A DNA stretch of 64,000 nt, taken from IMG/VR virus record IMGVR_UViG_3300023278_002893, positions 62,001-126,000 of that record; one strand, given 5' to 3'. Both the position numbers and the translations under genes were made by a program. Below are positions 828 through 55,971 of the stretch, one piece after another. The notes beneath the pieces were generated by a model. It was not told where the DNA came from and did no database searches. It was given only the letters and a program-made list of their open reading frames with translations. Positions within the stretch are counted from its first letter, which is position 1. Every line of letters starts with the position of its first letter.

Positions 828-846
828 GGTGTAATAACCCCCTTCA

Positions 847-2114: not shown

Positions 2115-2117
2115 AAT

Positions 2118-3502: not shown

Positions 3503-3532
3503 TTCTCATTCTCCTGTGAATTGCCTTTTCTA

Positions 3533-10585: not shown

Positions 10586-10590
10586 GATTT

Positions 10591-11255: not shown

Positions 11256-11291
11256 TTACTTCTCCTCAAAAGTTCTACCTAGTACCTTGAT

Positions 11292-11463: not shown

Positions 11464-11473
11464 CCCATCTATC

Positions 11474-28278: not shown

Positions 28279-30228
28279 CTATTTGCTCCAGTGGTCGGCG
28301 ATAGTAACCTCTACCCCATCATCCTTTCCAACCGGAACAGTCCGGACAAAGCGATGGAACGCCTGTCTCATGACTTCAGCCTTGATCTCCGATACTTCCT
28401 CTGCTCTATCATCAGGTACCTCTGAAACGATTTCATCATGGACGGTAAATAAAAGCTTGGCGCCATTGATCTTATCATATACTCTCTGGAGCCGGTTAAG
28501 AGCCTCCTTGGTAATGTCCGCATTAGTACCTTGGATAACAGCATTGTTACCTGCCCGGCGAGTTGCGTTCTTAGAACGCCTGAACATCTGCTCGTCTTCC
28601 GGATCAGCAAGAGTGTAGTAGCGTTTTCGGCCGATTATGGTTTTGCTGTGTCGGAGAGCGATAGACTCATGTCCATTGCGATCCAACCACCGTTTAATAC
28701 CACTATACGTATTGAAGTAATCATCAAGAATCCCCTCAGCCTCACCTTGTGGAATCTTAAATCGTCCCGCAAGAGACCACGCACTGAGACCATAAGCAAT
28801 ACCGAAGTTAATCACCTTAGTCTTGCTTCGGAAGTCATAAACCTTACGATATATAGATACGTCAGATTCACTGTACAAGTCAAGTAGATTAACTGACGGA
28901 TGATCCTTTTTCTTAATTTCATTATACACATCTAGATCCGCGTCAGTAAATCCAAACACCTGCTTTGCTGTAATGATATGGAGATCCCCTCCTCCCTCAA
29001 AAATTTCAATAAAGCGTCGATCTTGTGAGACTTCCGCCAGGATGCGCAACTCACACTGACTATAATCCGCAGTAAGAATCTTGTTTCCCGGCAACGCTTT
29101 GAAGCATTCGCGGAAAGAGATCTTTACAAACTCATCCTCCCTATCCTGAGGCATGTTCTGTAGATTAGGTTTATCCGAACTAAGACGCCCAGTTGTAGTT
29201 CCCAGCTGATGAAACGTAGCGTGAAGTCTGTGCGTGGTGCGCGAAATCTTCTGTAGAACAGGCTCTCCATATGTAGAGACTAACTTATCGTAACCTCTCC
29301 ACTCCAGAAGGAGTCTGGCCAGGTCGTGATCTATATCCTGAAGGGTCTTCTCCTCGGTGTTCTCCAAGCTATATCCTAACTTGTCAAACGCATCTAATAA
29401 CTGATCCTTACTGGAAATATTCACCGTGGAGGCGCCAAAGAGCGTGTTCTGCTCCTGGAAAGGCTCCAATATGGTAGTTATATCTTTACTAATTACTACC
29501 GACTGATCCTTAGCTTCTTGTATGATTCTACGCCAATGTTCCTGGTCGATGGTAACGCCATTGAGTTCCATTTCTGAATTCGGCCGAAGAAATTCAAATT
29601 CCAACAGAGCAGTGTCAATGAGACCCTCACGCATCAACATGCCGCTAAGAACATCCACCAGCGGGTGTAAGAAAAGCACATCATCTGCCGCGTATTGCAA
29701 CTGTTTGGGCGTAAATTCCTTGTGATATTGATGGTTAATGAAGCTGGTACGGACAGACTTGTCCATGTTAATACCTAGGAACTTCTTCGCCAGGAATGCC
29801 AAACTCTTATAAGGGAATTGCTTCTTATGCTTCTCCCCCATTGGAATAAAACCACCACGATTGTCATCTATAATACCCGAGGTTAGAAGTCTGTAGGCTA
29901 TTTGAGTATCAAACATACCATCCAGTTGGATACCCAACTGCTTACGGGTAGCCTGATAATCGAACTTAAGGTTATGTCCAATTTTAAGGATACCAGGATC
30001 CTCCAAGATAGGCCCTAAAAGACGACCGTCTATCTTACGAGGATCGAAGAGATAAGCCACCTCCTCGGTACCCAGCTGCATTAGAAGCAACCTGTCAATG
30101 CCCTCAACCACCTTCAATCCGGTGGTTTCCACATCATAACCTAGGCGGGAGAAAGTTGAAAGATACTCTAGTGCCTCTTTGGCCTTATACTCATCATCGA
30201 CATAGACGTAATTGCAATCCTCTATCAC
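28279..30228 (-). CDS. polA: DNA polymerase family A (3'-5' exonuclease plus polymerase; no 5'-3' exonuclease)
   Basis: YDVETTG, GHNLKFD, YAADD, TTTGRLSSDKPNLQN, motif A ADYSQCELR, motif B KVINFGIAYG (Phe at the E. coli 762-equivalent), motif C TVHDEI. Confidence 0.95.
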   Translation of the reverse strand: MIEDCNYVYVDDEYKAKEALEYLSTFSRLGYDVETTGLKVVEGIDRLLLMQLGTEEVAYLFDPRKIDGRLLGPILEDPGILKIGHNLKFDYQATRKQLGIQLDGMFDTQIAYRLLTSGIIDDNRGGFIPMGEKHKKQFPYKSLAFLAKKFLGINMDKSVRTSFINHQYHKEFTPKQLQYAADDVLFLHPLVDVLSGMLMREGLIDTALLEFEFLRPNSEMELNGVTIDQEHWRRIIQEAKDQSVVISKDITTILEPFQEQNTLFGASTVNISSKDQLLDAFDKLGYSLENTEEKTLQDIDHDLARLLLEWRGYDKLVSTYGEPVLQKISRTTHRLHATFHQLGTTTGRLSSDKPNLQNMPQDREDEFVKISFRECFKALPGNKILTADYSQCELRILAEVSQDRRFIEIFEGGGDLHIITAKQVFGFTDADLDVYNEIKKKDHPSVNLLDLYSESDVSIYRKVYDFRSKTKVINFGIAYGLSAWSLAGRFKIPQGEAEGILDDYFNTYSGIKRWLDRNGHESIALRHSKTIIGRKRYYTLADPEDEQMFRRSKNATRRAGNNAVIQGTNADITKEALNRLQRVYDKINGAKLLFTVHDEIVSEVPDDRAEEVSEIKAEVMRQAFHRFVRTVPVGKDDGVEVTIADHWSK

Positions 30229-31130
30229 TTTAATGCCCTTTTTCTTTTCTTGATCATTGCGGCCAATTCGGTTTCAAAGTCGGCGGCACATTCAAAACAT
30301 AGGAGTTCAGTCGCTTGGGTAGTATCTGCCACTGAGTCGGTAACTTTTATCCTATTATCTTCTAGAAATTTGAGCTGACCTTTGAACTCAGTGACTTCTT
30401 TTATCTTGGTGGCCAAATCCTTTATAGACATACCCACCCCGGTGCCAATATCCAAAATACCGAGATCTTTTATCCTAGAATTAACAACCAATTCCGTGGC
30501 ACGCACAGCATCCGACACGTGAATAAAGTCGCGAACACGATTGACGTTATAAAGAGCGACGTCGCGCCCCGTTAGCATGACATCTGTAAGGAAATTGATC
30601 ATGCTGTTGGAGGAAAAGGATTTGCTCAGACCATACATCTCAGAAAACCTCAACGACACCGGCTCTATGCCCAGCAGAGGCGCAACAAGATGGAGGAGAT
30701 CCTCACTCCCCCGCTTTGAAATACCGTAATGCGATACCGCATCACGGGCGGCCTCACAGGAAGCGAAGATTATCTTAGAAGGTTTGGTATTAACCACACT
30801 ACACGCATCTAAAAGATTAGCCATCCCCACATAGTTGGTCTCAGCACACGTTCGAAAATTATCCACCGATTCTGGCCTCGTTACAAATGCGGCCAGGTGA
30901 ATGATGACGTCAGGCTTATCCCTATCAATGACCCTGAAGATATCGTAGTAGTTACGAATGTTACCCACGACTGCGGGATGGACATTCTTCCTCTTCGGGA
31001 ATTTCTGCGCAAGAGATGACCCGTGCATAAAACTATCCAGGATAAAAATCTGGTTGCTGCGAGTCTTGGCCAGGCTAGCTATCAACTCCTGCCCAAGAAA
31101 ACCAGCACCGCCTGTAATTAGAATCCTCAT
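30225..31130 (-). CDS. NAD-dependent epimerase/dehydratase
   Basis: TGGAGFLG, HLAA, YGISK, RDFIHVSD. Confidence 0.85.
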   Translation of the reverse strand: MRILITGGAGFLGQELIASLAKTRSNQIFILDSFMHGSSLAQKFPKRKNVHPAVVGNIRNYYDIFRVIDRDKPDVIIHLAAFVTRPESVDNFRTCAETNYVGMANLLDACSVVNTKPSKIIFASCEAARDAVSHYGISKRGSEDLLHLVAPLLGIEPVSLRFSEMYGLSKSFSSNSMINFLTDVMLTGRDVALYNVNRVRDFIHVSDAVRATELVVNSRIKDLGILDIGTGVGMSIKDLATKIKEVTEFKGQLKFLEDNRIKVTDSVADTTQATELLCFECAADFETELAAMIKKRKRALK

Positions 31131-31131
31131 C

Positions 31132-32052
31132 CTAGCTAGATTCCTTTAGAATCTCAAGATACCTAGCGTATGCACGGAGTTCTCCCGCAGACTCCCCATC
31201 AATACCTTCCCTACAGTGACGGTTCTTTTCGATGAACTCAGACAGCACGGGGTGTAGTTTTTCAGAAACCATAAGGCTGTTGAAGTGGGAAAACAAAGAG
31301 ACCTCTGGGTGATGTTCCGCAAGCAATCTTTTCATCTCATGCCATTCTTCAGTACGAATGCCATCCGATCGTCCCCCTCCCGGCCACTCCCCTGCAATAA
31401 AATAATTGCGACAAGCGTTGCGGTACTCATCCCGTGTGCTCTTTATGTGATAGTAGTGTGCCTTACTTCTAGCCACCGGCCCAGTCATTCCCTGAAGAGC
31501 CTGATGTAGATCCACATCGTATCGCATGTTGGGATTCCACTTGAAGAAAATTTGCCGATAATACTCACACGGCCCATTATCTACACGATTAGCCCAGTCA
31601 CCTTCCTTGTAGGAAATATCATTGGCCCGAAATTCCATCACACCAAAATTACGACCACCCTCAGACTGCTTAACCGCTTCTCTGAGAGAGGTAAGCAACT
31701 CTGCGGAAGGAACCTCATCATCATCACAGAGGAGAACCCAACCCCCCTTGACGTGCTTTAGATATTCATTATACTGGTTGGCAAAGCTGTCATCCCACTC
31801 TCGCTGGAACACCTCAACCTTAGAACCCAGAGACTTGAGATACTCATAAGACCCGTCCTTACTGAAACCATCCACAATTACTGCACGATCTACATAAGGG
31901 AGAACTACGGGAAGGTTCCTCTTGACGTTATTGATCCTGTCTTGGGTAACAGAGACATAAGTAATAGTATCGTCAGACCACACGTTCGTAGGAACAGCCA
32001 CCATGGGTTCAACGTTGTCAGACGAGGTTGTTCTAAATCCTTCAAATTTCAT
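31132..32052 (-). CDS. Glycosyltransferase family 2-like protein
   Basis: IVDGFSKDGS, WDDSFANQYN, LCDDDE. Confidence 0.7.
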   Translation of the reverse strand: MKFEGFRTTSSDNVEPMVAVPTNVWSDDTITYVSVTQDRINNVKRNLPVVLPYVDRAVIVDGFSKDGSYEYLKSLGSKVEVFQREWDDSFANQYNEYLKHVKGGWVLLCDDDEVPSAELLTSLREAVKQSEGGRNFGVMEFRANDISYKEGDWANRVDNGPCEYYRQIFFKWNPNMRYDVDLHQALQGMTGPVARSKAHYYHIKSTRDEYRNACRNYFIAGEWPGGGRSDGIRTEEWHEMKRLLAEHHPEVSLFSHFNSLMVSEKLHPVLSEFIEKNRHCREGIDGESAGELRAYARYLEILKESS

Positions 32053-32061
32053 TTGTTTCTC

Positions 32062-32961
32062 CTAGTAAGTCATCTCACCTTGATGGGGTTTGCGATCCTT
32101 ATTGTATGGGATCTCTTTGTTTCCGGCCAAATAAATATTCTGATCGGGGTGCATGAGTCCGAAATAGACCGTAAACCAACTACGAGCCTCAGAGTTCTCA
32201 CTATCACGATTCAACAACATCCACTGCTTGAACTCGTCCTTGATTGTACCATTGACCATCTCAGGGTAGAACTGATCAAAGGTCTCGAATCCATTGTCAG
32301 AACACATCTTCTTGAACTCTGCCCACTCAGGAACGCTAGTGTTGTTCTGGGCAACTTCTCCCGTACTCCAATAATTCTTACACCCCCGCAATAGCTCCGA
32401 CGCGGTAGTCTTGATGTGGAAATAACGATAATCCACCTGACCAACCGAGGGCTGCGCATAAGGGGTGTGTATCCCACCATGAGTCTCGCCGTTCCAGTTT
32501 ATTCCACGAGACACTTTGAAAAGAACAGGGTTGTAGTAATTAGACTTGTTGTCATATACCTCACCCTCGATGCTGATTCTAATATCATGTGCATTGAATG
32601 CTATCCTATTCACACCACCGGCCTCAGCCTTGGCTATCATAGTACGCAGTTGATACAGTGCGGGATCTTCTAAGAACTCATCGCAATCCATGTGGAAACA
32701 CCACGAGTCCTCAGGGAGCTTGCTTAGATACGCATTCCGAAGTGTTGGCGGGTGATAGGGAACATTGATTATTTCCCACGCCACATTCCACGCCTTGCAC
32801 TCTGCAGAAGCTAGAAACTCCTCACTCTCCTTACAGCTTCCATGCAGAATAATAATAGATCGATCTGCAAATGGGGCATGCGTACGAACAACCTTTATCA
32901 ATTCTTGTGGTCTTCCTTTAACTACCGTTGCAAAGATCAATTCTGTCATAATAATCTCCAA
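32062..32961 (-). CDS. Glycosyltransferase family 2-like protein (paralog of 31132..32052)
   Basis: LRNAYL, HMDCDEF, GETH, and shared YFHIK...CKNY and EWxEFKK blocks. Confidence 0.6.
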   Translation of the reverse strand: MEIIMTELIFATVVKGRPQELIKVVRTHAPFADRSIIILHGSCKESEEFLASAECKAWNVAWEIINVPYHPPTLRNAYLSKLPEDSWCFHMDCDEFLEDPALYQLRTMIAKAEAGGVNRIAFNAHDIRISIEGEVYDNKSNYYNPVLFKVSRGINWNGETHGGIHTPYAQPSVGQVDYRYFHIKTTASELLRGCKNYWSTGEVAQNNTSVPEWAEFKKMCSDNGFETFDQFYPEMVNGTIKDEFKQWMLLNRDSENSEARSWFTVYFGLMHPDQNIYLAGNKEIPYNKDRKPHQGEMTY

Positions 32962-33742
32962 CCTCTTTTAAAATGTCTACCCTATCAAAGGTAAGACCTA
33001 ATTCTTTTGGGGAATTGAACTGATAACATACGCTTGTCATCAGCTCTCCCATCAGTTTCACATCAATATTATACTTTTCGTTTAGATAACTGGCGACATC
33101 CAACAAATTTGTCGGCTGTCCGGATCCTATATCAACTCCCTTGGGGTGATCTAGGGCAATACCTTTCTCGACAGATTGCTGGGTAAATTCTCCCAACAAC
33201 CTGACTGCCTCATCAATAGGAATAAAATCACGGAGACAGGAATATACCTGCACCGCCCCTTCCCTCTTTGCGGTATAGACCATCTTAGAAAGACCATCTT
33301 TGTCGGGGTCACGATTGAATATCGTAGAGAACCTGATATTTTTGTACGCCACTTTATCCACATACCGCAATGCCATCTTCTCCATCAGGAACTTAGACCA
33401 CGCATATAGACTCATATCCGACGGGTGTTTATAACAACGCCAAGTTGCCAGGACACTCATCGAACTTATAAGTATAACCGGAAAAGAAGAACCCCGTACC
33501 TGATGGACAATCTCTAGAACATCCATCGGCAGGAACGCGTTATCATCTATCAGCTGGATCTCACTGTCAGAAGACAGAGAGGCTCCAGCACACACCAACG
33601 CATCGACACTCATTAACTTATCAGCCAAGACATCATATTGAGACCTATTCCTATAACGAACAGAAACTGGAACAGTCTCGGGGAACTGTCTTATAAATTC
33701 CCGACCAATAGAACCACTAGCTCCTGTTAGAGCAACCCGCAT
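32918..33742 (-). CDS. NAD-dependent epimerase/reductase (extended SDR)
   Basis: TGASGSIG, ISSMS, YAWSK, RDFI. Confidence 0.75.
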   Translation of the reverse strand: MRVALTGASGSIGREFIRQFPETVPVSVRYRNRSQYDVLADKLMSVDALVCAGASLSSDSEIQLIDDNAFLPMDVLEIVHQVRGSSFPVILISSMSVLATWRCYKHPSDMSLYAWSKFLMEKMALRYVDKVAYKNIRFSTIFNRDPDKDGLSKMVYTAKREGAVQVYSCLRDFIPIDEAVRLLGEFTQQSVEKGIALDHPKGVDIGSGQPTNLLDVASYLNEKYNIDVKLMGELMTSVCYQFNSPKELGLTFDRVDILKEVGDYYDRIDLCNGS

Positions 33743-34698
33743 TATCTCAACTCCTCCTCATCCCGGGGTCTTACTACCAGTTCCTGCCAATATCGGAAGA
33801 TATTCAATCCATTCTCCACATAATGAGAAACCTTTTCGCCTCTCAAATAATTTAGCACCATCTCAGGCTCGTTGAATCCCGCCAAAGTACGAGCTGCGGT
33901 AGTTCCAGAACAACGGGCATTAATCTCCAGCACGTAGGGAATGTTATCCCTAACTATAAGCTGAACATTACAAGGCCCGAAAGGTTTGATCTCACTAATC
34001 AACTCGCGGAGAAATTCCATAACCATCGGGTTTTGATTTACTCGTGCTTTATAGGTATCCCCAGAGCGCAGCTCCCGGGTCATGCAGATTATACCCTTGA
34101 CGTCCCCATCGAAGCTGACTGTGCCGCAAGTATATTCCTCTCCCTCTATATACGACTGCATTATCTGCTGAGAACCCGCCTCAATGTTACTATTGGCCTC
34201 CCACCGGGTGGGAAACCTCATAAAGCCCTGAGAACGGCAACCTGTACGGGGTTTAAGGATAACAGGTTCTTCCGGAATCCCCGCACACCCACCCGTTTCG
34301 TAATCATACGTAGGAGTGAAAGGCAGATTCTTAAACTCAAGAAACTTCATCAGCGCAAACTTATCCTCACTGAGGGTTATTACATCAGGCGTGCTTATAA
34401 TAGGAGTAATTCCAGAAGCACGAAGCTTCTCAGCCTGTTCGGAAATTACTTCAAGCTCTGCGTCAAACCCGGAGAAAAGATATTTAGCTCCAGAGCCGTG
34501 GCAGATACTGATGAGACTATCTATGAATTCTGGGTCGGTATAATTCTTGCCTATGTACCCGTAATCTGCCATGTAAAGTCCGGCAGCTTGATTACTAGGA
34601 TCAATAGCAACTGATTCATACTCGGTATCTTTTAGAGACTTTATGATACTCTGACCTACCCCTCCGCCTGCAGCGGTGACTGCTACTTTTGTACTCAT
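33742..34698 (-). CDS. ATP-grasp ligase (short CarB-like family found in glycan clusters)
   Basis: VTAAGGGVG, DK, KPRTGCRS, QSYIEGEEYT, GPCNVQ, EINARCSGT. Confidence 0.8.
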   Translation of the reverse strand: MSTKVAVTAAGGGVGQSIIKSLKDTEYESVAIDPSNQAAGLYMADYGYIGKNYTDPEFIDSLISICHGSGAKYLFSGFDAELEVISEQAEKLRASGITPIISTPDVITLSEDKFALMKFLEFKNLPFTPTYDYETGGCAGIPEEPVILKPRTGCRSQGFMRFPTRWEANSNIEAGSQQIMQSYIEGEEYTCGTVSFDGDVKGIICMTRELRSGDTYKARVNQNPMVMEFLRELISEIKPFGPCNVQLIVRDNIPYVLEINARCSGTTAARTLAGFNEPEMVLNYLRGEKVSHYVENGLNIFRYWQELVVRPRDEEELR

Positions 34699-35273
34699 GT
34701 CGTTATACTCCCCAATTCCTCAAAGATCACATCATTTCCATCCAGTAGGGCGTAACCTCGTGAATGCCCTCTTCTACCATGTGTAATGGAGCCTGGATTT
34801 ATAACCGACCGGCGGTCAAATCTAAACCAATTCTGGGTATGTGTATGTCCTATAACAATTATGTCCTTATCTGTTTGGTCCAATAAGAGACGGGCAGAAT
34901 CCTCTACAAAGATGTAATCGTTAACTGGATGAGTGTGGGTAACAAATATGTTACCTTCCTCATACACCTCCGGCAAAGACTCCATGTACTCTCTATATTT
35001 ACCTTTAAGGTTCTCCCTGGCCCATAGTACGGGTTCGGTGATGAAATCCGGATAGGGAGACAGGTTGTAGTCCTCATCCAACACCATCTCATCGTGATTT
35101 CCTCTAACAGTCTTCACGTCCAAATCTATGAGCATGTCAATGACATACTCCAAGTCAGTGTTATAGCCGCAAATATCCCCGGCACAGATCAGCTCATCAA
35201 AGCCACCCGCAACGGCCTCGATATCCTGAGACGCCCTCTTGCTGGAATGTATGTCGCTGAATAGTAATTTCAT
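34695..35273 (-). CDS. Calcineurin-like metallophosphoesterase
   Basis: SDIHS, GDICG, RGNHD, GHTH, NPGS. Confidence 0.85.
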   Translation of the reverse strand: MKLLFSDIHSSKRASQDIEAVAGGFDELICAGDICGYNTDLEYVIDMLIDLDVKTVRGNHDEMVLDEDYNLSPYPDFITEPVLWARENLKGKYREYMESLPEVYEEGNIFVTHTHPVNDYIFVEDSARLLLDQTDKDIIVIGHTHTQNWFRFDRRSVINPGSITHGRRGHSRGYALLDGNDVIFEELGSITT

Positions 35274-35275
35274 TT

Positions 35276-36361
35276 CTAGTCCCTAAAAAAAGAAGCCACT
35301 GTGCCTATAATAAATTCAATCTCCGAGTCCTTCAATGCTGGGTATAGGGGGAGCGTAAGACACGTAGAGGATAAACGTCTTCCATTCTCCGCACTACTCA
35401 CAATACCCGCAAACGAACCCATATCTGGAATTGCAGGATCAAAGTAACGCTTAGTGCCCACCCCTCTCGCATTTAGAAAGGTTTCTAGACGATTCCTAGT
35501 GGCCGGGTGCTCCAGAAAAATAACACAATCCTTGTAAGAAGGATCAACTCCTAATCTAGGCTCCCACAGACGGACGGGAAGATTAGCGAAACCATTGCGG
35601 TAAGTATTCATAAGATAAGTTCTTCTATCCCGAGTCTTCCCGAAACATTCAATAGCATGATATGCCAGAATAGAATTGAACTCCTGAATCTTACCATTCA
35701 ATCCCCTAGTTCTAGTATCCAAACTTCCCACCAACCCATGACCCGATCCCTCCCGAACGCCCTCATAAATGTCCTTATTTCCAGTGATAATTAGACCACC
35801 TTCTCCTGAAGAAATCTGCTTGGTGGCGGCAATACTATGAACAGTGGCGTCGCCGAGGGTGGAAATGTGTCTGTCTTTATATCTGGTGCCGAAGACATGA
35901 GCGCCATCGAAGAACAAGCGAGCGCCATACCTACCACACACCGCCTCATGTTCTTCTGGATAACACGCATTGCCCCACATATGAACAGGCATCACCGCAG
36001 CAATATCTGGGTGCGTACGGAACGCACCCTCCACCTTGTCAGGCAGAAGCTGCCCGTTGTTATCCACATCCACCACGACGGGGATATGATCATTCCACTC
36101 CAACGCCTGTAAAGTTGCATTGAAAGTAAAGGAGGGCAGAACAACCTTAGATCTGGGGGGTATAAGATTCAGCAGTAGGATCAATCCCAAAGAACAACTA
36201 GAAACTGCATGCACGTGAGAAACTCCAAACAGATCAGAGACCCGCTGCTCCAAACGATCTGTGTACTTACCCGGATAGAGCATACCGGACGCATACATCT
36301 CTCTTATTTCAGGCTCCACCACAGAGTACGGGGGGAGCTGAGGTTTATAAATGGGAATCAA
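35276..36361 (-). CDS. DegT/DnrJ/EryC1/StrS sugar aminotransferase
   Basis: PSFTFNAT, PVHMWG, DGAHVFG, PLP lysine in SIAATK..GEGG, LPLYP. Confidence 0.9.
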   Translation of the reverse strand: MIPIYKPQLPPYSVVEPEIREMYASGMLYPGKYTDRLEQRVSDLFGVSHVHAVSSCSLGLILLLNLIPPRSKVVLPSFTFNATLQALEWNDHIPVVVDVDNNGQLLPDKVEGAFRTHPDIAAVMPVHMWGNACYPEEHEAVCGRYGARLFFDGAHVFGTRYKDRHISTLGDATVHSIAATKQISSGEGGLIITGNKDIYEGVREGSGHGLVGSLDTRTRGLNGKIQEFNSILAYHAIECFGKTRDRRTYLMNTYRNGFANLPVRLWEPRLGVDPSYKDCVIFLEHPATRNRLETFLNARGVGTKRYFDPAIPDMGSFAGIVSSAENGRRLSSTCLTLPLYPALKDSEIEFIIGTVASFFRD

Positions 36362-36373
36362 TTATACACCCTC

Positions 36374-37336
36374 CTAGGTTGCCCAATAGAACTGCTTGGG
36401 GTTCTTGTGATATTCTGTGTACCACGGGATGGCAGCCCTGATACCTTTCCTCAGGTCGTAATTACACTTCCATCCCAGTCCCTTGATCTTCTCCGCTTCG
36501 AGGTACTGTTCCTTGATCTCAATGAAATCCTTCTCCAGTACCTGAGGCTCAATATCTACTCCCATTTCTTCGATTATCATCTGGGTAGTCTCGAAGATAT
36601 TGAAGAAGCCCGAACCTCCAACATTGTACGCCTCACCTGGGAGTCCCCGATCTTGAACAGCCATGTACGCATTAACAACGTCATCGATGTACATGAACTC
36701 TCTCTTGTAATTACCTACTCCTTTATAGATCACTGGTCGGATTCCATCGAGAATTCTCAGGATACTTCCAGGGATAATTCTAGATTTATTGAGATCGCCC
36801 GGCCCAAATATATTCCCCGAACGAATAATGGAGGTGTCCAGTCCATATGTATATGCATAAGACTGGGCAACTAGATCCGTGCAAGACTTAGAGGTACTAT
36901 AAGGGTCACTCGCCAATAGTGCGAAATCCTCTTTGTAGGGCAGCTTGTCATGGACACCGTACGCTTTATCCGAGGAAGCAACTACTACCTTGGAAACATG
37001 ACCACACTCCCGGGCAGCTTCCATTACATTAACGGTACCCATAAGGTTAGTCTGCCAACAACTCTTGGGATCTGCTGTTGCCATCTTAAGAATAGTAATA
37101 GCACCTATGTGGAAAATAGTGTCGATCTCATACTTAGAAACAGCGTATCTAACTGTGTCATAGTCGCGAAGATCTCCATAAACTACAGAAATGTTATCCA
37201 AAAGAGAACGCCTGGATTTATAGTTACGATCACGTACCAACCCAACCACCGTCTTGTCCATGTCTAAAAGTCTCTGGCATATTGCAGATCCAACGAATCC
37301 ATTCGCCCCTGTAACAAGGACATTATTCATCTGCAT
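36374..37336 (-). CDS. NDP-hexose 4,6-dehydratase (CDP-glucose/GDP-mannose 4,6-dehydratase-like)
   Basis: TGANGFVG, ASSDKAYG, PYSTSK, RSGNIFGPGD.N.SRIIP. Confidence 0.85.
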   Translation of the reverse strand: MQMNNVLVTGANGFVGSAICQRLLDMDKTVVGLVRDRNYKSRRSLLDNISVVYGDLRDYDTVRYAVSKYEIDTIFHIGAITILKMATADPKSCWQTNLMGTVNVMEAARECGHVSKVVVASSDKAYGVHDKLPYKEDFALLASDPYSTSKSCTDLVAQSYAYTYGLDTSIIRSGNIFGPGDLNKSRIIPGSILRILDGIRPVIYKGVGNYKREFMYIDDVVNAYMAVQDRGLPGEAYNVGGSGFFNIFETTQMIIEEMGVDIEPQVLEKDFIEIKEQYLEAEKIKGLGWKCNYDLRKGIRAAIPWYTEYHKNPKQFYWAT

Positions 37337-37973
37337 CTTTCATCTCCTTTTCAATCTCTGTATAAAGATAATCCTGACTCTTTTGTTTTGCACTACTCTT
37401 GTAGTGTAATATGTTAAAACGGGAAGGTTTTTCTAAAGAATCAGAATCGAAATCTATCTCTGTTCTATTTTTAAACCCTACAATCTCTTCATGCACGGGG
37501 TTTTGAAAACGACAATAATTCCTAAACAATCTGTACTGGTAGTCTGGATAAGTATCAGTTTGAATTCCATCAATAAAATTCCTACGAGGAATACCAAAAC
37601 AATCAAACTGCTTATCAGTTTCAGGCAGAACACCCGCAAGTTGCAACGACGCCTGTCCTTGTTCAGGATCTATCAATAGGGGTATAATTTCCAACAACGT
37701 AGGCTCCAACCTCTCATCAGGATCGTGAAGATAGATCCAATCTGTATCCAACGACGAGATTGCGAGATTCTTCTGAGCCGAGAAATCCCTCTCGAAGGGG
37801 TGATTTATGACCCGCGCACCTAACTTCTCACACCAACTAACAGTATCATCTTTAGAACCACCATCCACTACCACAATATCATCTACTACATTATAAAACT
37901 GCGGGATGGTTGCGGGAATGTGTGACTCCTCATTCTGGGCAATCATCGCGAGTCCGATTGTGGGCTTAGCCAT
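37323..37973 (-). CDS. Glycosyltransferase family 2
   Basis: MIAQNEE, VVDGGSKDDT, DFSAQKN, DPDE, YPDYQYRLF, VHE. Confidence 0.85.
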   Translation of the reverse strand: MAKPTIGLAMIAQNEESHIPATIPQFYNVVDDIVVVDGGSKDDTVSWCEKLGARVINHPFERDFSAQKNLAISSLDTDWIYLHDPDERLEPTLLEIIPLLIDPEQGQASLQLAGVLPETDKQFDCFGIPRRNFIDGIQTDTYPDYQYRLFRNYCRFQNPVHEEIVGFKNRTEIDFDSDSLEKPSRFNILHYKSSAKQKSQDYLYTEIEKEMKDADE

Positions 37974-39099
37974 TTAAACCTCCCCTATCTATTTCATCCA
38001 GTCTATTGACAATCATGTCACCAATCTTATCCCAAGTAAAGTTTTCTTGAACATTTTTACGAGCCAAAAGACCTTTCTCCTTAGCACCCTCTCGATTATT
38101 ATAAACATGACGCATCTGGGAAATAGCGTGACCAATGTCAGGCTCACACCACCTCTGATCTCCTGTATAATAAGGAGACCAGGTCATTCCATCCACGGGG
38201 GTCAAATTATAATCCACCGGATAACTGTTCTCCTCATTTAGAAAGTCAGTCTGACCTCCATAAGAGGGAGTAATGACAGGATTACCCATCGCCGCGGCTT
38301 CAAAATGTGGAAGACCCCACCCCTCCGAACGCTGCACCAAGGAGAAGCAATCTCCTCGTTTGTGGAGACCCATAATATCTCCATGGCTCATATTCTCCAC
38401 AATAACATACATCTTGGGATAGTGCCCCAGAGTCATGTACTTCCTGTACTCCTTGACCAGATTAACAATCTTGTCACGGTCAGCTCCGTGATCTTTCATG
38501 TAGGTCTTAAGTACCAAGACCACATCATCGACACCTGTGAATGCTGCGTTGTACGCGGACAAAAGACCATAAGGGTTCTTACGCTCTTGCCACTGAAAAA
38601 TAGAGTAAAACACATAGTCATTTACCCCAACACCTTCAATATTAAAATCAACAACACTATCTAAATCGGGAACATCTATTGCGTGGGGGATTTTATACAG
38701 AGGGACTGTGACTCCCGAGTCTCTAAACACTCCCATATTCCAATCACAAGGTAACCAAACCTCATTAGCCCTATTACAAGACATAGTCCAGGTAGGATGA
38801 AGCTTGCTAGTCTCCCACACAGTATAACCTATGAGGTGTTTATTGCTTTCAAACTTAGTCCAATGTGCCCACAAATCAGGGGTCGAATGAACGATGATCT
38901 TATCATAACCAATGTTATTATTGATGAGACTCGATAAGATCTCACCATCCTCTCCCAGATCTGGGCGAGCCTGCTCGAAGGAAATCGGAGCCAAGGTAAT
39001 AGGATACCCCTTTCGATGGATAGAAAGAACGTAATTCCTTGCCGCTTCTGCGTACCCACTTCCATCGAAGACAGGTCCTATGTATTTGACTCCAACCAT
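37966..39099 (-). CDS. Glycosyltransferase family 4 (GT-B)
   Basis: SGYAEAAR, WET, ERKN, EGWGLPHFEAAAMG. Confidence 0.85.
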   Translation of the reverse strand: MVGVKYIGPVFDGSGYAEAARNYVLSIHRKGYPITLAPISFEQARPDLGEDGEILSSLINNNIGYDKIIVHSTPDLWAHWTKFESNKHLIGYTVWETSKLHPTWTMSCNRANEVWLPCDWNMGVFRDSGVTVPLYKIPHAIDVPDLDSVVDFNIEGVGVNDYVFYSIFQWQERKNPYGLLSAYNAAFTGVDDVVLVLKTYMKDHGADRDKIVNLVKEYRKYMTLGHYPKMYVIVENMSHGDIMGLHKRGDCFSLVQRSEGWGLPHFEAAAMGNPVITPSYGGQTDFLNEENSYPVDYNLTPVDGMTWSPYYTGDQRWCEPDIGHAISQMRHVYNNREGAKEKGLLARKNVQENFTWDKIGDMIVNRLDEIDRGGLNG

Positions 39100-40433
39100 T
39101 ATAACATTTCTCCCTTAAATACAGGTTTGTTAGCATCAAGAGTGGTCTCAAGGAGAGAACTACTAGATGTACTCACAATCTTGTCGAAGACATCCACCCA
39201 GCGAGGGTTTATGTGCTTATCCCAAAGGAGATTATTGGAAACCATTTCGAATGCGGCTTTGGCTCTCTTCTTTCCCTCATCTCTGTTATCGTGAAGAATA
39301 ATCAGCTGCTCCACCATCTTGTGAAGATGTCCGGTGGGACGAGGAACCTCATTGTCGTGAGGAAGAACAGTAGTGTGATCAATATCTCCACCACTGGGGT
39401 AAGGGAAACCGGTCTCTTCGGTAATATATTCTCCTAAACACGTGTTGTTCGGGAAGACTACCGGAGTCATGGTCGCCATGGCCTCAGTCCATGATAATCC
39501 CCACCCCTCACCTACTGTAGTGCTAACAATACAATCACTTGCATTGTAGATCATATTGACTACTTCCAATGGGAAACCATTGGAGGGAGTAAAATTCTGG
39601 GGTAGGATCACATCTTCTTTTATATCCAGACCGTGTGATTTGATAACCTCAGGTAAATTCCACCCCTGATCAACCGCCGCCATGTGGAGATACAGGACAG
39701 AATTTGGACGCAGCTTCTTGAAATCCTGGAAAGCTCGGATTGTGGCAGGGATATCCTTACGTTGCTGATTCCTATTCACATTGGTAATGATGAACTTGTC
39801 AGCCTGTGGGCCAAAAAACTGTTTGCGGAAATTAAGTGTGTCTTGCTCGGAAAGCGGAAAGAAGACATCTGGATTAACACCGTGAGGCATAACCTGGAGC
39901 CTATTAGCAATCTCAGGTACCAGTCTAACAGACTGTTCCCGAGCGAATTGGGAATAGGTTACGGGAAAATCTACTGAGTTGGCAGCCCGAATCCACTCCT
40001 CCTTAGGAATACCATCTACCGGATAGTAAAAGACACTCTTGAAACGCTTACCGGACTTCTTCAAATTGTCTAACAAACCGGGGACAAAATCAAGAATGAA
40101 CGTGTCCTGTAGAAAGAACAAGATGTCATAGTCTAGATTGGGGTCAAGTAGGTGCTGCTGCAGGCGCTGCCGTCCATAAGGATCGCGCTGCTGATTGACA
40201 GCCATGGGCCAAATATTGAAAGGATACTCATGAGGATCTCCCCAATAATTAATGCCTAAGATATCAACTTCGTAGCGTCCGGAATTGTACAGAGCGGGAA
40301 GGATGTTACGCGACACCTGCCCAAATCCCGTGGCACATGTAGGTGAATCTCCGTAGAAAATAATCTTAGACTTCTTCTTCTTTTTCTTACCGATATTTGG
40401 ATCCATTCTATCTAAAAATTTCGGCTCGGCCAT
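39099..40433 (-). CDS. Glycosyltransferase family 4 (GT-B)
   Basis: TGFGQV, PHGV, NRNQQRKD, GEGWGLSWTEAMA. Confidence 0.85.
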   Translation of the reverse strand: MAEPKFLDRMDPNIGKKKKKKSKIIFYGDSPTCATGFGQVSRNILPALYNSGRYEVDILGINYWGDPHEYPFNIWPMAVNQQRDPYGRQRLQQHLLDPNLDYDILFFLQDTFILDFVPGLLDNLKKSGKRFKSVFYYPVDGIPKEEWIRAANSVDFPVTYSQFAREQSVRLVPEIANRLQVMPHGVNPDVFFPLSEQDTLNFRKQFFGPQADKFIITNVNRNQQRKDIPATIRAFQDFKKLRPNSVLYLHMAAVDQGWNLPEVIKSHGLDIKEDVILPQNFTPSNGFPLEVVNMIYNASDCIVSTTVGEGWGLSWTEAMATMTPVVFPNNTCLGEYITEETGFPYPSGGDIDHTTVLPHDNEVPRPTGHLHKMVEQLIILHDNRDEGKKRAKAAFEMVSNNLLWDKHINPRWVDVFDKIVSTSSSSLLETTLDANKPVFKGEML

Positions 40434-40440: not shown

Positions 40441-40650
40441 CTAACCTCCAGTCAAGAGCAACAACGCTCTCTTAATTATACGACGTGGGACGTCGATTGT
40501 GTCTTTATTTTTATCTTCAAGGTAAATTTTATACTGAGTGAATTTAACCACATACCCAAATAACTTAGACCCGTCAGCACATTCTATACCCATGAACGGA
40601 TGATCTAACTCCTCAAGCTGCGCTTGCGTTCTCGTTATCTGAGACATCAT
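40441..40650 (-). CDS. Small hypothetical protein (Sm/SH3-like beta barrel?)
   Basis: ORF track; start uncertain. Confidence 0.45.
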   Translation of the reverse strand: MMSQITRTQAQLEELDHPFMGIECADGSKLFGYVVKFTQYKIYLEDKNKDTIDVPRRIIKRALLLLTGG

Positions 40651-52736: not shown

Positions 52737-52782
52737 TTTTATCTCCTACAATTATTCTATTTTATATGACCCCTCTCAGTTA

Positions 52783-55953: not shown

Positions 55954-55971
55954 TAAGGTTCTCCAAGAGGA

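What the first reader, a model, noticed from the sequence alone, without database searches (positions are those of the whole stretch)
30225..40433. Eleven-gene NDP-amino-sugar and glycosyltransferase pathway embedded in the replication region
Seen, in transcription order: GT4, GT4, GT2, 4,6-dehydratase, DegT aminotransferase, metallophosphoesterase, ATP-grasp ligase, SDR, GT2-like, GT2-like, SDR, running straight into polA. Established: a 4,6-dehydratase plus DegT makes amino-6-deoxy sugars, and ATP-grasp enzymes form amide bonds. Inference: an N-acylated rare sugar is transferred to virion proteins, to DNA, or to the host surface. No flippase, polymerase or TM segments are evident, which favours a cytoplasmic acceptor. 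No hydroxymethylase or TET/JBP gene is in view, which weakens the DNA option.
Basis: partly seen in the sequence, partly recalled or inferred. Interest (0 to 1): 0.7.

Follow-up and report, generated by a model that had tools for sequence, protein, structure and literature searches.

The report
Swappable sugar-coating gene island in jumbo phage
A 298-kb phage carries a complete, membrane-free toolkit for making an unusual N-acylated amino sugar and attaching it to something inside the infected cell, most likely its own proteins, and close relatives carry different versions of the sugar-making part, much as bacteria swap surface-antigen genes.

Summary
Eleven tightly packed minus-strand genes (30225-40433) encode two GT4s, three or four GT2-type transferases, a 4,6-dehydratase, a DesI-like aminotransferase, a phosphoesterase, an ATP-grasp ligase and two SDRs. 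They end 4 nt inside polA. The record is a 297.7-kb tailed phage, not a cellular locus.

New findings:
- The island is modular. GT4a, GT4b, a small GT2 and the last SDR form a constant frame, and the middle cassette differs between close relatives in four variants. In one variant a PglD-like N-acetyltransferase replaces the phosphoesterase/ATP-grasp/SDR trio, so the trio is probably the N-acylation step.
- The same ATP-grasp/phosphoesterase/SDR/DegT module recurs in glycan loci across Bacteria and Archaea and has no characterised member.
- Thirty-six phage islands contain no membrane protein, whereas 48 of 61 cellular loci with the module do.
- The GT2s most resemble the protein/peptide glycosyltransferases GmaR, SunS and ThuS. 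GT4a most resembles a chlorovirus GT.
- The genome has a true ThyA and no TET/JBP or sugar nucleotidyltransferase.
- A second cluster of methyltransferases, a radical-SAM enzyme and a GT2 lies 30 kb away.

Best reading: an autonomous cytoplasmic glycosylation system, probably acting on phage (virion) proteins. The acceptor is unproven.

The parts
40441..40650 (-). orf69, a small conserved ORF directly upstream of GT4a; function unknown
   Evidence: No Pfam hit. Conserved at 46-84% identity in the same position in the near-clade loci.
39099..40433 (-). G1 / GT4a: retaining GT-B (GT4) glycosyltransferase, the conserved anchor of the island
   Evidence: Glycos_transf_1 33.7 bits. E309-x7-E317 is invariant in 34 orthologues. 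AF2 model pLDDT 85.5. Best fold match is 3oy2, a chlorovirus NY2A putative GT, E 5.5e-21 against about 1e-15 for cellular GT4s. It brings in 52 viral loci and 1051 homologue clusters; the best 120 lie on contigs of 334 kb or less. The L027 orthologue carries an intein inside the ExE motif.
37966..39099 (-). G2 / GT4b: second GT4-like protein, paired with GT4a in about 40 of the loci that extend past GT4a
   Evidence: Glycos_transf_1 28.8 bits. Adjacent to GT4a, or separated by 0-2 small genes, in about 40 loci. Invariant E259-G-x-G-L. Inteins in L024 and L027. Predicted GT4a-GT4b complex has only weak support: ipSAE 0.33, best control 0.00.
37323..37973 (-). G3 / small GT2 (GT-A), part of the constant frame; absent in L006 and in variant D
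   Evidence: Glycos_transf_2 47.6 bits. Best solved-sequence match is GmaR 22ao, E 2.3e-11, then SunS/ThuS. 250 homologues; the best 120 are on contigs of 320 kb or less.
36374..37336 (-). G4 / NDP-hexose 4,6-dehydratase (extended SDR), first gene of the variable cassette
   Evidence: Epimerase 177 bits and GDP_Man_Dehyd 161 bits. TIGR01181 dTDP-glucose 4,6-dehydratase 168 bits, LegB 148, CDP-glucose dehydratase 141, all below equivalog cutoffs. Best PDB match is 6vlo. GxxGxxG and YxxxK present; S-D-K where 6vlo has T-D-E.
35276..36361 (-). G5 / DegT-family PLP sugar aminotransferase, DesI-like (C-4 amination inferred)
   Evidence: DegT_DnrJ_EryC1 200 bits. Best NCBIfam model is PLP_DesI, 166 bits, below cutoff. 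Best PDB match is 2po3, E 2.4e-40. PLP lysine (A-T-K) conserved. No ketoisomerase was identified among the eleven proteins.
34695..35273 (-). G6 / YfcE-type calcineurin-like metallophosphoesterase, member of the acylation trio
   Evidence: Metallophos_2 76 bits; TIGR00040 57.8 bits against cutoff 56.25. Motifs DxH, GD, GNH[DE], H and GHxH are all conserved. A phosphoesterase lies within 4 kb of the ATP-grasp gene in 57 of 62 cellular loci. The only good solved relative is uncharacterised (3rqz).
33742..34698 (-). G7 / ATP-grasp amide ligase (PRK12767 'carbamoyl-phosphate-synthase-like' family, PylC-like N-domain)
   Evidence: NF009402 236.8 bits against cutoff 218. ATP-grasp_3, ATPgrasp_Ter and PylC-like_N. 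The best solved relative by far is the uncharacterised 2pn1. 763 homologues. Found in 80 cellular genomes of many phyla at 38-49% identity.
32918..33742 (-). G8 / short divergent SDR, member of the trio
   Evidence: Epimerase 24.6 bits. GxxGxxG and YxxxK conserved across phage and cellular orthologues. No PDB sequence match. A G8-like SDR lies next to the ATP-grasp gene in at least 32 of 62 cellular loci.
32062..32961 (-). G9 / GT2-like transferase, paralogue of G10; co-varies with the sugar cassette
   Evidence: Glyco_tranf_2_4 26.9 bits. Paralogous to G10, E 1e-14. D110, D112 and E113 (G10 numbering) are invariant in the family alignment A5. Present in variants A and C, replaced in B, absent in D.
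31132..32052 (-). G10 / GT2 (GT-A) transferase with a helical C-terminal region, SunS/ThuS-like
30225..31130 (-). G11 / GalE-like extended SDR (4-epimerase or 4-ketoreductase), constant frame; overlaps the polA start
   Evidence: Epimerase 97 bits. Best NCBIfam model is GalE, 92 bits, below cutoff. Best PDB matches are 4zrm UDP-glucose 4-epimerase and CDP-tyvelose 2-epimerase. Present in all four variants, including D, where it is the only partner of the dehydratase.
28279..30228 (-). PolA-type DNA polymerase, the downstream boundary gene (context, not part of the pathway)
   Evidence: DNA_pol_A 282 bits and the 3'-5' exonuclease domain 105 bits.
1..5111 (-). Right-hand part of cluster 2, which continues upstream to genome position C1:55748. 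The part inside the window holds methyltransferases and unknown ORFs; the B12-binding radical-SAM enzyme and the GT2 lie upstream of the window.
   Evidence: Methyltransferases inside the window: 108-827 (Methyltransf_24 40.3 bits; RMNT_CmcI 21.5, below its cutoff), 1539-2114 (weak), 2118-2672 (RMNT_CmcI 47.3 bits) and 4518-5111 (Methyltransf_11). Upstream of the window: C1:55748-57268 B12-binding radical SAM; C1:57279-57929, 58890-59585 and 59582-60157 methyltransferases; C1:60157-61104 GT2. This GT2 is the only GT outside the island.

Best explanation
The eleven genes are a phage-encoded, self-contained cytoplasmic glycosylation island.

Shown: the enzyme families, intact catalytic motifs, conserved synteny, absence of membrane components, and a modular build. 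The constant frame is orf69, GT4a, GT4b, the small GT2 and the terminal GalE-like SDR. The middle cassette is exchangeable.

Inferred pathway: a host-made NDP-glucose (the phage has no nucleotidyltransferase) is dehydrated by G4 to NDP-4-keto-6-deoxyhexose. The DesI-like G5 aminates it at C-4. The ATP-grasp ligase G7, working with the phosphoesterase G6 and the SDR G8, then puts a non-acetyl acyl group (identity unknown) on the 4-amino group. G11 supplies a second sugar by 4-epimerisation or 4-keto reduction. The conserved GT4a/GT4b pair and the GmaR-like G3 start and extend a glycan. The SunS-like paralogues G9 and G10, which co-vary with the cassette, add the cassette-specific sugar. A separate methyltransferase/radical-SAM/GT2 cluster probably methylates and extends the glycan.

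The acceptor is most likely a soluble protein made in the infected cell, and I favour phage structural (virion) proteins. On that reading, cassette exchange gives related phages different glycan 'serotypes', as in the clade-specific fibril glycosylation clusters of Megavirinae.
For: Enzyme identities and motifs.

Synteny: the island recurs between the PD-(D/E)XK nuclease and PolA at 36-85% protein identity.

Modularity: L010/L015 has a PolA 84% identical to ours and is its sister in the PolA tree (97/97), yet it keeps only GT4a (83%), GT4b (82%), G3 (69%) and G11 (75%). Its middle is a 41%-identical dehydratase, an unknown 337-aa protein and two other GT2s. There are four variants, A to D.

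The trio as the N-acylation step: in variant C a PglD_N+hexapeptide N-acetyltransferase follows DegT in place of G6-G8. In 62 cellular loci the ATP-grasp gene has a phosphoesterase within 4 kb in 57, a DegT in 48 and a G8-like SDR in 35. Contexts include a Mycobacterium locus that looks like a glycopeptidolipid locus and an archaeal glycan locus.

Cytoplasmic protein acceptor:
- 0 of 266 ORFs in 36 phage islands have two or more hydrophobic segments, against 107 of 946 in cellular loci.
- G3's best solved relative is GmaR (E 2.3e-11), and G10's are SunS/ThuS by sequence and fold.
- GT4a's best fold match is a chlorovirus GT.
- The best 120 GT4a and G3 homologues all lie on contigs of 334 kb or less.
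- In Synechococcus phage S-CBS4 the GT4a homologue lies between the portal and the head protease/major head protein genes.
- Inteins sit at conserved motifs of GT4a and GT4b in relatives, marking them as conserved, expressed phage genes.

Analogy: Megavirinae clusters with a 4,6-dehydratase, a PLP aminotransferase, an N-acetyltransferase, GT2s and a methyltransferase, clade-specific in content (PMC10117803). Mycobacteriophage capsid and tail-tube glycans are cited in PMC12619734.
Against: There is no direct evidence for any acceptor.

The island sits in the replication module and appears co-transcribed with polA, not beside structural genes. That placement is what one expects of DNA-modification or early host-takeover genes.

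No Ser/Thr-rich acceptor tails were found in the proteome.

The GT4a-GT4b complex prediction gave only weak support.

O-antigen GTs are also soluble, so the lack of membrane proteins does not exclude use of the host's lipid carrier and exporters.

G4 has S-D-K instead of T-D-E, and every equivalog score is below its cutoff, so the nucleotide and the sugar stereochemistry are unknown.

The roles of G6 and G8 are guesses. No member of the trio has a characterised close relative.
Confidence: 0.45

Rival explanations
1. Host-envelope remodelling. The soluble phage GTs act at the cytoplasmic face on the host's undecaprenyl-linked O-antigen, capsule, teichoic-acid or S-layer glycan precursors. Host flippases and ligases export the altered glycan. 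The changed cell surface blocks superinfection or lets progeny escape from debris.
For: This is the published reading for sugar/GT clusters of jumbo cyanophages (PMC7824862, section 3.4.10). Cassette swapping between close relatives resembles O-antigen locus diversification. The DegT/ATP-grasp/SDR/phosphoesterase module is borrowed from cellular surface-glycan loci. GTs of surface-polysaccharide loci are usually soluble. The island is expressed with early or middle replication genes.
Against: No initiating phosphoglycosyl transferase, flippase, polymerase, ligase or any multi-pass membrane protein occurs in 36 islands, or (beyond three small ORFs) in the whole genome. The GT4a/GT4b pair, with a highly conserved N-terminal domain, is kept in about 40 of the 52 loci and in over 1000 clusters. 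That is hard to square with acceptors that differ from host to host. The best GT2 relatives are protein/peptide GTs, not lipid-carrier GTs.
Confidence: 0.25
2. DNA hypermodification. The GTs decorate bases of the phage genome with the rare sugar to evade restriction or CRISPR, which would explain the position inside the replication module.
For: The island is embedded between a recombination nuclease and polA and appears co-transcribed with them. Phage GTs are known to hypermodify DNA with diverse glycans (Pyle et al. 2024, cited in PMC12619734). There are weak, below-cutoff hits to GT4-conflict PF20706.
Against: Known DNA glycosylation needs a 5-hydroxymethyl-pyrimidine handle. The genome has no TET/JBP. 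Its only ThyA-family gene is a true thymidylate synthase, and it has a dCMP deaminase, which indicates canonical dT and dC. Five or six GTs plus about eight methyltransferases build an oligosaccharide far more elaborate than any known DNA glycan. The nearest GT relatives are protein GTs and a chlorovirus GT.
Confidence: 0.07
3. The acceptor is a host protein or a small molecule. In one version the phage glycosylates a host cytoplasmic protein (flagellin, pilin or a translation factor) to take over or disarm the cell. In the other the island makes a secreted glycosylated metabolite.
For: GmaR glycosylates flagellin and SunS/ThuS glycosylate peptides (own knowledge; the matches are). Cellular GT4s near GT4a in fold space act on small acceptors (BshA, MshA, GlgM). 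The ATP-grasp/phosphoesterase pair also occurs without sugar genes in Amycolatopsis. PMC7824862 raises a secondary-metabolite reading for a second cyanophage cluster.
Against: A host target would vary with the host, yet the constant frame is conserved across a very wide phage clade. No exporter, peptide precursor or NRPS/PKS partner is present. Cassette diversification is more typical of exposed antigens than of enzyme-like takeover functions.
Confidence: 0.13

Closest known systems
Megavirinae (Mimivirus) fibril-glycosylation gene clusters (R141 4,6-dehydratase, L136 PLP aminotransferase, L142 N-acetyltransferase/GT, GT2s, R132 methyltransferase)
   Same: A virus-encoded cluster that makes a 4-amino-4,6-dideoxyhexose (viosamine type), N-acylates and methylates it, and transfers it with several GT2s without membrane machinery. 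Cluster content differs between related viruses (PMC10117803). G4's best solved relative is 6vlo, which I recall to be Mimivirus R141.
   Different: This one is in a bacteriophage. The acyl step uses an ATP-grasp/phosphoesterase/SDR trio instead of an acetyl-CoA transferase. The frame is a GT4 pair. The cassette is exchanged between near-identical backbones. The island lies in the replication module. The acceptor is unknown, and no nucleotide-sugar precursor genes were identified (no NTP_transferase; a class-II amidotransferase of unknown role is present).
Jumbo cyanophage sugar/GT clusters (for example P-SSM2, about 15 genes)
   Same: Large phages with 1-4 NAD-dependent epimerase/dehydratases and several GT families, polymorphic between relatives (PMC7824862).
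   Different: According to that paper, the cyanophage clusters include sugar kinases, cupin-fold sugar isomerases and nucleotidyltransferases, and they are read as LPS/capsule modifiers. This island lacks those genes, has the DegT/ATP-grasp module, and has GT2s of the SunS/GmaR type.
Mycobacteriophage virion glycosylation (Freeman et al. 2023)
   Same: Phage-encoded soluble GTs glycosylate capsid and tail-tube proteins in the cytoplasm (as summarised in PMC12619734).
   Different: From my own knowledge, those phages carry one to a few GTs near structural genes and use host sugars. Here there is a full rare-sugar pathway, six or seven GTs and about eight methyltransferases, located away from the structural genes.
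Glycocin S-glycosyltransferases SunS/ThuS and Listeria GmaR
   Same: They are the best sequence and fold relatives of G3 and G10. From my own knowledge, they are cytoplasmic GT2 enzymes that glycosylate peptides or proteins directly from NDP-sugars.
   Different: Identity is only 12-16%. No glycocin precursor peptide and no TPR/anti-repressor domain is present. Acceptor specificity cannot be read from the fold.
DegT + ATP-grasp + SDR + metallophosphoesterase module of cellular glycan loci (Mycobacterium avium-complex GPL-like loci, Halobacteriota/Bathyarchaeia/Thermoplasmata, Bacteroidota, Planctomycetota)
   Same: The same four families are adjacent to each other, with 38-49% identity for the ATP-grasp enzyme.
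   Different: The cellular loci carry exporters, flippases and acyltransferases. I found no biochemical characterisation in the searched library. A link to N-acyl (such as lactyl) amino sugars of MAC glycopeptidolipids is from memory only; that paper could not be read.

Membership tests
NDP-hexose 4,6-dehydratase (extended SDR) | Rossmann GxxGxxG and catalytic YxxxK | tested here: met
   TGANGFVG and PYSTSK are conserved in 7 orthologues. Epimerase 177 bits and GDP_Man_Dehyd 161 bits.
NDP-hexose 4,6-dehydratase (extended SDR) | Acid/base pair after the catalytic Ser/Thr (T-D-E in RmlB-type enzymes) | tested here: inconclusive
   S-D-K aligns to T-D-E of 6vlo: the Asp is kept and Glu becomes Lys. 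From memory, CDP-glucose 4,6-dehydratases have D-K here. All equivalog scores are below their cutoffs.
DegT/DnrJ/EryC1 sugar aminotransferase | Family HMM above cutoff, and the PLP-binding lysine | tested here: met
   PF01041 200 bits against cutoff 19.8. The Lys in S-I-A-A-T-K is invariant in 6 orthologues.
DegT/DnrJ/EryC1 sugar aminotransferase | C-4 regiospecificity (DesI/viosamine type) | not testable with these tools
   Best hits are DesI-like (TIGR04427 166 bits, below cutoff; 2po3 E 2.4e-40). No 3,4-ketoisomerase was identified in the island. Variant C pairs this enzyme with a PglD-like acetyltransferase. All of this is indirect.
ATP-grasp amide ligase, NCBIfam NF009402 (PRK12767.1-1) | Score above the curated cutoff; ATP-grasp metal/ATP residues | tested here: met
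   236.8 bits against cutoff 218. The E-x-N-A-R block and the K/E/Q motifs are invariant across phage and cellular members.
ATP-grasp amide ligase, NCBIfam NF009402 (PRK12767.1-1) | Known substrates or product | not testable with these tools
   The only close solved relative is the uncharacterised 2pn1. The family is absent above cutoff from all 14 control genomes.
Calcineurin-like metallophosphoesterase, YfcE subfamily | Five metal-binding motifs; subfamily HMM | tested here: met
   DxH, GD, GNH[DE], H and GHxH are conserved. TIGR00040 57.8 bits against cutoff 56.25.
GT4 retaining GT-B glycosyltransferase | GT-B two-Rossmann fold and E-x7-E motif | tested here: met
   GT4a model pLDDT 85.5, matching GT4 structures with TMt 0.7-0.8. 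E309 and E317 are invariant. For GT4b only E259-G-x-G-L was checked.
GT2 (GT-A) glycosyltransferase | GT-A fold and DxD motif | tested here: met
Cell-surface polysaccharide locus (O-antigen/capsule type) | Initiating phosphoglycosyl transferase, Wzx/Wzy or ABC exporter, ligase (multi-pass membrane proteins) | tested here: not met
   0 of 266 ORFs with two or more hydrophobic segments in 36 phage islands, against 107 of 946 in 61 cellular loci. None in the eleven proteins.
Cell-surface polysaccharide locus (O-antigen/capsule type) | Located in a cellular chromosome | tested here: not met
   297.7-kb IMG/VR virus record with terL. Relative G001 has direct terminal repeats. The flanks are phage replication genes.
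Phage DNA glycosylation system (T-even or TET/JBP type) | An enzyme that makes 5-hydroxymethyl-pyrimidine (ThyA-like hydroxymethylase or TET/JBP dioxygenase) | tested here: not met
   No PF12851 hit. The single PF00303 hit is a true thymidylate synthase, NF002497 458 bits against cutoff 327.
Virus-encoded virion glycosylation system (Megavirinae/chlorovirus/mycobacteriophage type) | Soluble virus-encoded GTs, with or without sugar-nucleotide tailoring enzymes, and content that differs between lineages | tested here: met
   Compare PMC10117803.
Virus-encoded virion glycosylation system (Megavirinae/chlorovirus/mycobacteriophage type) | Glycan demonstrably attached to a virion protein | not testable with these tools
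   No isolate and no sequencing run could be listed. No obvious S/T-rich acceptor tail.

The most novel reading that the evidence does not exclude
This widespread clade of large environmental phages coats its own virion proteins with a cytoplasmically built oligosaccharide, using SunS/GmaR-like protein glycosyltransferases. The terminal rare sugar is set by an exchangeable cassette, in effect phage 'serotypes'. Variant A makes a new N-acyl amino sugar through an uncharacterised ATP-grasp/phosphoesterase/SDR acylation chemistry shared with glycan loci of Bacteria and Archaea.
Probability: 0.3. Interest if true: 0.8.

Novelty: new variant of a known kind. Interest (0 to 1): 0.62.

Why it matters
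Virus-encoded glycosylation with bacterial-type rare sugars is well documented for giant eukaryotic viruses. In phages it is known only as one to a few GTs in mycobacteriophages, or as unassigned clusters in cyanophages.

This island would add three things:
- A full amino-sugar pathway and six or seven GTs in a large, environmentally widespread phage clade. GT4a alone has more than 1000 homologue clusters.
- Cassette exchange between near-identical backbones, which implies selection on glycan identity and gives a handle on phage-phage or phage-host recognition.
- A conserved four-gene module (DegT, ATP-grasp, SDR, phosphoesterase) found across many bacterial and archaeal phyla whose chemistry appears to be uncharacterised. 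The compact, soluble phage versions would be good material for reconstituting it.

Inteins inside glycosyltransferase catalytic motifs are also unusual.

Tried and rejected
- Near-identity DNA search of the island against 50,697 phage records found nothing. PolA is under 32% identical to any listed phage.
- The search for related loci with the single ATP-grasp protein found nothing in viral contigs. Alignment-based scans worked.
- Literature on the ATP-grasp/phosphoesterase cassette gave no characterised example. The M. intracellulare serotype-7 GPL paper (PMC1797286) is not held, so the link to N-acyl GPL sugars remains a memory-based lead.
- The 'moraphage' jumbo lineage (PMC12619734) was considered as the identity of this phage and judged unlikely. 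That paper builds a family B polymerase (PolB) tree for the moraphages, while I found a PolA here and did not search this genome for a PolB.
- Sequencing runs: none was listed, so expression timing and read-level evidence for DNA modification could not be examined.
- The window has no tRNAs. The host was not identified. Two homologues are labelled as from an Altiarchaeales MAG, which may be a binning artefact.
- GT4a-GT4b complex prediction: weak support only. Median ipSAE 0.33 (runs 0.51, 0.33, 0.29), best of three controls 0.00, at least 55% contact agreement between runs, partner pLDDT at least 85. At scores of 0.60 or under, this mark was reached by 7 of 80 solved complexes and by both of the 2 mismatched pairs (of 110) that passed, so such a pass is more often wrong than right unless the pairing was already likely. 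It is not used as evidence.
- The scan for Ser/Thr-rich acceptor tracts found no extreme tracts, only moderately S/T-rich large proteins.
- The promoter scan showed no enrichment. The terminator-like excess (25 against 13.7±3.7) consists of weak sites inside ORFs and is not informative.
- The 'cellular O-antigen locus' reading is rejected.
- PHROGs gave nothing for most large ORFs, so the major capsid and tail proteins were not identified and no acceptor candidate could be named.

Full report
**1. What is there**

The minus strand between 30225 and 40433 carries eleven ORFs. Their junctions range from a 44-nt overlap to a 12-nt gap, and the last ORF overlaps the start of a PolA-type polymerase by 4 nt.
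- GT4a (444 aa) and GT4b (377 aa).
- A small GT2 (G3, 216 aa).
- An RmlB-like 4,6-dehydratase (G4).
- A DegT-family aminotransferase (G5).
- A YfcE-type metallophosphoesterase (G6).
- An ATP-grasp ligase (G7, NF009402 236.8 bits against cutoff 218).
- A short divergent SDR (G8).
- Two GT2-like paralogues (G9 and G10).
- A GalE-like SDR (G11).

G9 scores just below the Pfam cutoff, but it is a true paralogue of G10 (E 1e-14) and shares its DxD motif. Catalytic signatures are intact and conserved in orthologues:
- G4, G8 and G11: GxxGxxG and YxxxK.
- G5: the PLP lysine.
- G6: all five phosphoesterase motifs.
- G7: the ATP-grasp metal ligands.
- GT4a: E-x7-E.

None of the eleven proteins has a transmembrane segment.

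**2. Context**

The window is bases 62001-126000 of a 297,725-bp IMG/VR virus record that CheckV rates 100% complete. The flanks form a replication and recombination module: SSB, DnaJ, RuvC, a PD-(D/E)XK nuclease, PolA, DUF192, an intein-containing RNR, a DnaB-like helicase, a UvsX-like recombinase and a clamp. A large terminase lies at 194.5-196.3 kb. A related genome of 295,848 bp has direct terminal repeats. The 'cellular O-antigen locus' refutation therefore does not apply. The phage is very divergent: there is no near DNA match, PolA is under 32% identical to any catalogued phage, and most large ORFs have no PHROG match.

**3. The island is conserved and modular**

Using the ATP-grasp protein, PolA and GT4a as probes, I recovered the same arrangement, PD-(D/E)XK – orf69 – island – PolA, in several metagenomic phage contigs. 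Four variants exist:
- **Variant A** (this window, L003/L004, L005, L006) has the full set. L006 lacks G3.
- **Variant B** (L010=L015, L025) keeps GT4a, GT4b, G3 and G11. Between them it has a different dehydratase (41% identical), an unknown 337-aa protein and one or two other GT2s.
- **Variant C** (L016, L023, and L020 as far as that contig reaches) keeps G4 and G5. L016 and L023 also keep G9 and G10, and they have a PglD_N+hexapeptide N-acetyltransferase exactly where G6-G8 sit here.
- **Variant D** (L024, and L027 as far as that contig reaches) has only GT4a, GT4b, G4 and G11.

Cassette type does not follow phylogeny. In a PolA tree this window pairs with the variant-B phage L015 (97/97 support, 84% identity), and that pairing excludes the variant-A phage L003. 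Variants A and B also each recur in distant relatives with 55-57% PolA identity. So the cassette is exchanged horizontally on a constant frame.

In a deeper clade, where GT4a is 50-56% identical, the GT4a/GT4b pair is still next to the nuclease. At least in L044 it is followed by other GTs: a methyltransferase, a GT2, a GT9 and several GT4-like proteins.

GT4a has 1051 homologue clusters at E ≤ 1e-20, and the best 120 all lie on contigs of 334 kb or less. The same holds for G3, whose best 120 lie on contigs of 320 kb or less. In L027 an intein splits GT4a inside its E-x7-E motif. In L024 and L027 an intein sits at the conserved N-terminal loop of GT4b.

**4. The ATP-grasp module**

G7 has 763 homologues. 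A scan of species-representative genomes returned 80 cellular loci at 38-49% identity. They come from Planctomycetota, Bathyarchaeia, Thermoplasmata, Methanobacteriaceae, Chloroflexota, Actinomycetota (Mycobacterium, Amycolatopsis), Bacteroidota, Patescibacteria, Myxococcota and others. Among the 62 loci with at least 4 kb on both sides, a phosphoesterase lies within 4 kb in 57, a DegT aminotransferase in 48 and a G8-like SDR in 35. The SDR count is a lower bound.

Examples of these contexts:
- A Mycobacterium paraintracellulare locus with MMPL and EryCIII-type GT neighbours, which looks like a glycopeptidolipid locus.
- A Halobacteriota glycan locus with a Wzx-like flippase and PMT_2 proteins.
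- A Bryobacterales locus with GT41-type transferases.
- A minimal DegT – phosphoesterase – ATP-grasp – GT4 cassette in a Phycisphaeraceae MAG.

None of the three trio proteins has a characterised close relative in the PDB, and my literature searches found no biochemical study. Variant C substitutes an N-acetyltransferase for the trio. That substitution is the best evidence that the trio caps the 4-amino group with an acyl group other than acetyl. What G6 and G8 do is inference only. They might, for example, dephosphorylate or reduce the acyl moiety.

**5. Pathway model**

Shown:
- The phage has no NTP_transferase.
- The only Epimerase-family hits in the genome (PF01370) are G4 and G11.
- The only GT outside the island is a GT2 in cluster 2.

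Inferred:
1. A host NDP-glucose is converted by G4 to NDP-4-keto-6-deoxyhexose.
2. G5 makes the NDP-4-amino-4,6-dideoxyhexose. Its best relatives are DesI-like, and no ketoisomerase was identified in the island.
3. G7, G6 and G8 make the N-acyl derivative.
4. G11 is GalE-like and is the dehydratase's only partner in variant D. It supplies a second sugar by epimerisation or 4-keto reduction.
5. GT4a, GT4b and G3 build a constant core, and G9 and G10, which track the cassette, add the variable sugar.

The nucleotide is undetermined. G4 has S-D-K where the Mimivirus enzyme 6vlo has T-D-E, and it scores similarly against the dTDP, LegB and CDP dehydratase models.

**6. Second cluster**

About 30 kb upstream (genome 55.7-67.1 kb, window 1-5111) lies a co-directional block. 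It contains:
- A B12-binding radical-SAM enzyme.
- Eight methyltransferase calls (two of them weak). Three match the rhamnosyl-O-methyltransferase/CmcI family above its cutoff.
- A GT2.
- Several unknown ORFs.

The same mix surrounds a G7 homologue on a 168-kb contig. Methylation capacity also varies: a complete variant-C relative has one RMNT-type gene and a complete deep-clade genome has none. An elaborate methylated glycan fits a protein or lipid acceptor better than DNA.

**7. Acceptor**

*Against DNA.* The genome has no TET/JBP. The only ThyA homologue is a true thymidylate synthase, and a dCMP deaminase is present.

*Against a lipid-linked or surface route.* In 36 phage islands (287 kb) no ORF out of 266 has two or more strongly hydrophobic segments. 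By the same measure 107 of 946 ORFs do so in 61 cellular loci that carry the module, and 48 of those 61 loci have at least one. The whole phage genome has only three small ORFs of that kind. The host could still provide the carrier and the export machinery, so this weakens the surface reading without excluding it.

*For a protein acceptor.*
- G3's best solved relative is GmaR (E 2.3e-11), followed by SunS and ThuS.
- GT4a's best fold match is a chlorovirus GT, 3oy2, at 5.5e-21 against about 1e-15 for cellular GT4s.
- In Synechococcus phage S-CBS4 a 32%-identical GT4a homologue lies between the portal and the head protease/major head protein genes. In Tetrasphaera phage TJE1 a 40%-identical homologue lies in a small sugar module just upstream of the terminase.

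These are leads, not proof. The similarity is mostly in the donor-binding core. The island here lies in the replication module. No S/T-rich acceptor tail was found. The GT4a-GT4b complex prediction gave only weak support.

**8. Comparison and novelty**

The closest functional analogue is the Megavirinae fibril-glycosylation cluster. It has a dehydratase, a PLP aminotransferase, an N-acetyltransferase, GT2s and a methyltransferase, comprises 6 to 33 genes, and differs between clades (PMC10117803). Jumbo cyanophage sugar/GT clusters (PMC7824862) and mycobacteriophage virion glycosylation (cited in PMC12619734) are the phage precedents.

The island differs from all of these in several ways:
- Its frame is a conserved GT4 pair.
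- Its cassette is exchanged between near-identical backbones.
- Its acylation module (ATP-grasp, phosphoesterase, SDR) is uncharacterised.
- Its GT2s are SunS/GmaR-like.
- It sits in the replication module.
- Orthologues carry inteins inside GT catalytic motifs.

I rate it a new variant of a known kind.

**9. Verdict**

My confidence in each part:

| Claim | Confidence |
|---|---|
| Functional NDP-sugar plus GT island of a phage | about 0.9 |
| Product is an N-acyl 4-amino-4,6-dideoxyhexose | about 0.6 |
| Acceptor is a cytoplasmic protein | about 0.55 |
| Acceptor is specifically a virion protein | about 0.4 |
| Rival: host envelope | 0.25 |
| Rival: host protein or small molecule | 0.13 |
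| Rival: DNA | 0.07 |

Noticed in passing
window 1-5111 and genome C1:55748-62000 (L068:1749-10115): A second glycan-tailoring cluster: a B12-binding radical-SAM enzyme, eight methyltransferase calls (two weak; three match RMNT_CmcI above its cutoff), a GT2 and several unknown ORFs. A ConA-like lectin-fold protein (C1:54710-55486) and a dCMP deaminase (C1:54202-54696) lie just upstream.
   Followed up: partly
L027:9989-12556 and L024:11320-13497 (also L027:12556-14739): Orthologues of GT4a and GT4b carry LAGLIDADG inteins. The GT4a intein sits inside the E-x7-E motif (GEGWGL | intein ending in HN | SWTE), and the GT4b intein sits after about residue 13 at the conserved FDG/SGY loop. I know of few if any inteins in glycosyltransferases.
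   Followed up: partly
window 23614-27387: The ribonucleotide reductase (1257 aa) contains an intein with a LAGLIDADG domain. The L003 orthologue is 852 aa and shows no intein.
   Followed up: no
L003:7425-8325 versus L004:7363-8325: The 4,6-dehydratase is split into 48-aa and 236-aa ORFs in one sample's contig and is intact (320 aa) in the sister sample's otherwise collinear contig. This is either an assembly error or a recent frameshift.
   Followed up: no
genome C1:26734-29898 (L151:735-3899): A 1054-aa protein has weak matches to both RNA polymerase Rpb2 domain 6 and Rpb1 domain 2. It may be a fused beta/beta'-like phage RNA polymerase.
   Followed up: no
genome C1:37249-38919 (L151:11250-12920): A 556-aa protein has a class-II glutamine amidotransferase N-domain (PHROG 'GlmS-like') but no SIS or Asn-synthase domain. 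It could feed amino-sugar or amidation chemistry.
   Followed up: partly
genome C1:190217-192559 (L149:14218-16560): A 780-aa protein two genes from the large terminase has chitin-binding CBM_14 (57.7 bits overall, from several weak stretches) and DUF6582. It may be a carbohydrate-binding virion protein.
   Followed up: no
window 42298-43110, 5086-7068 and 8340-9086: The phage encodes a full-length DnaJ (J, Zn-finger and C-terminal domains), a Lon-like ATP-dependent protease and PhoH. Relatives also encode ClpP.
   Followed up: no
genome C1:112736-174029 (window 50736-64000 and beyond): A run of very large minus-strand ORFs (666, 1056, 325, 1200, 2631, 2208 ... 4554 aa). Those tested have no PHROG or Pfam match, and some are 21-25% Ser+Thr. 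They are presumably structural or fibre proteins and are candidate glycan acceptors.
   Followed up: partly
proteins P0125 and P0253 (homologues of GT4a and G3): Two close homologues on short contigs (2.9 and 11.8 kb) are labelled by NCBI as from a 'Candidatus Altiarchaeales archaeon' MAG. This is either a binning artefact or a hint at the environment or host.
   Followed up: no
L009 (Amycolatopsis acidiphila) 10001-11643: The ATP-grasp/phosphoesterase pair also occurs without any sugar genes, among amino-acid catabolism genes. The pair may therefore have a function that is not tied to sugars.
   Followed up: no
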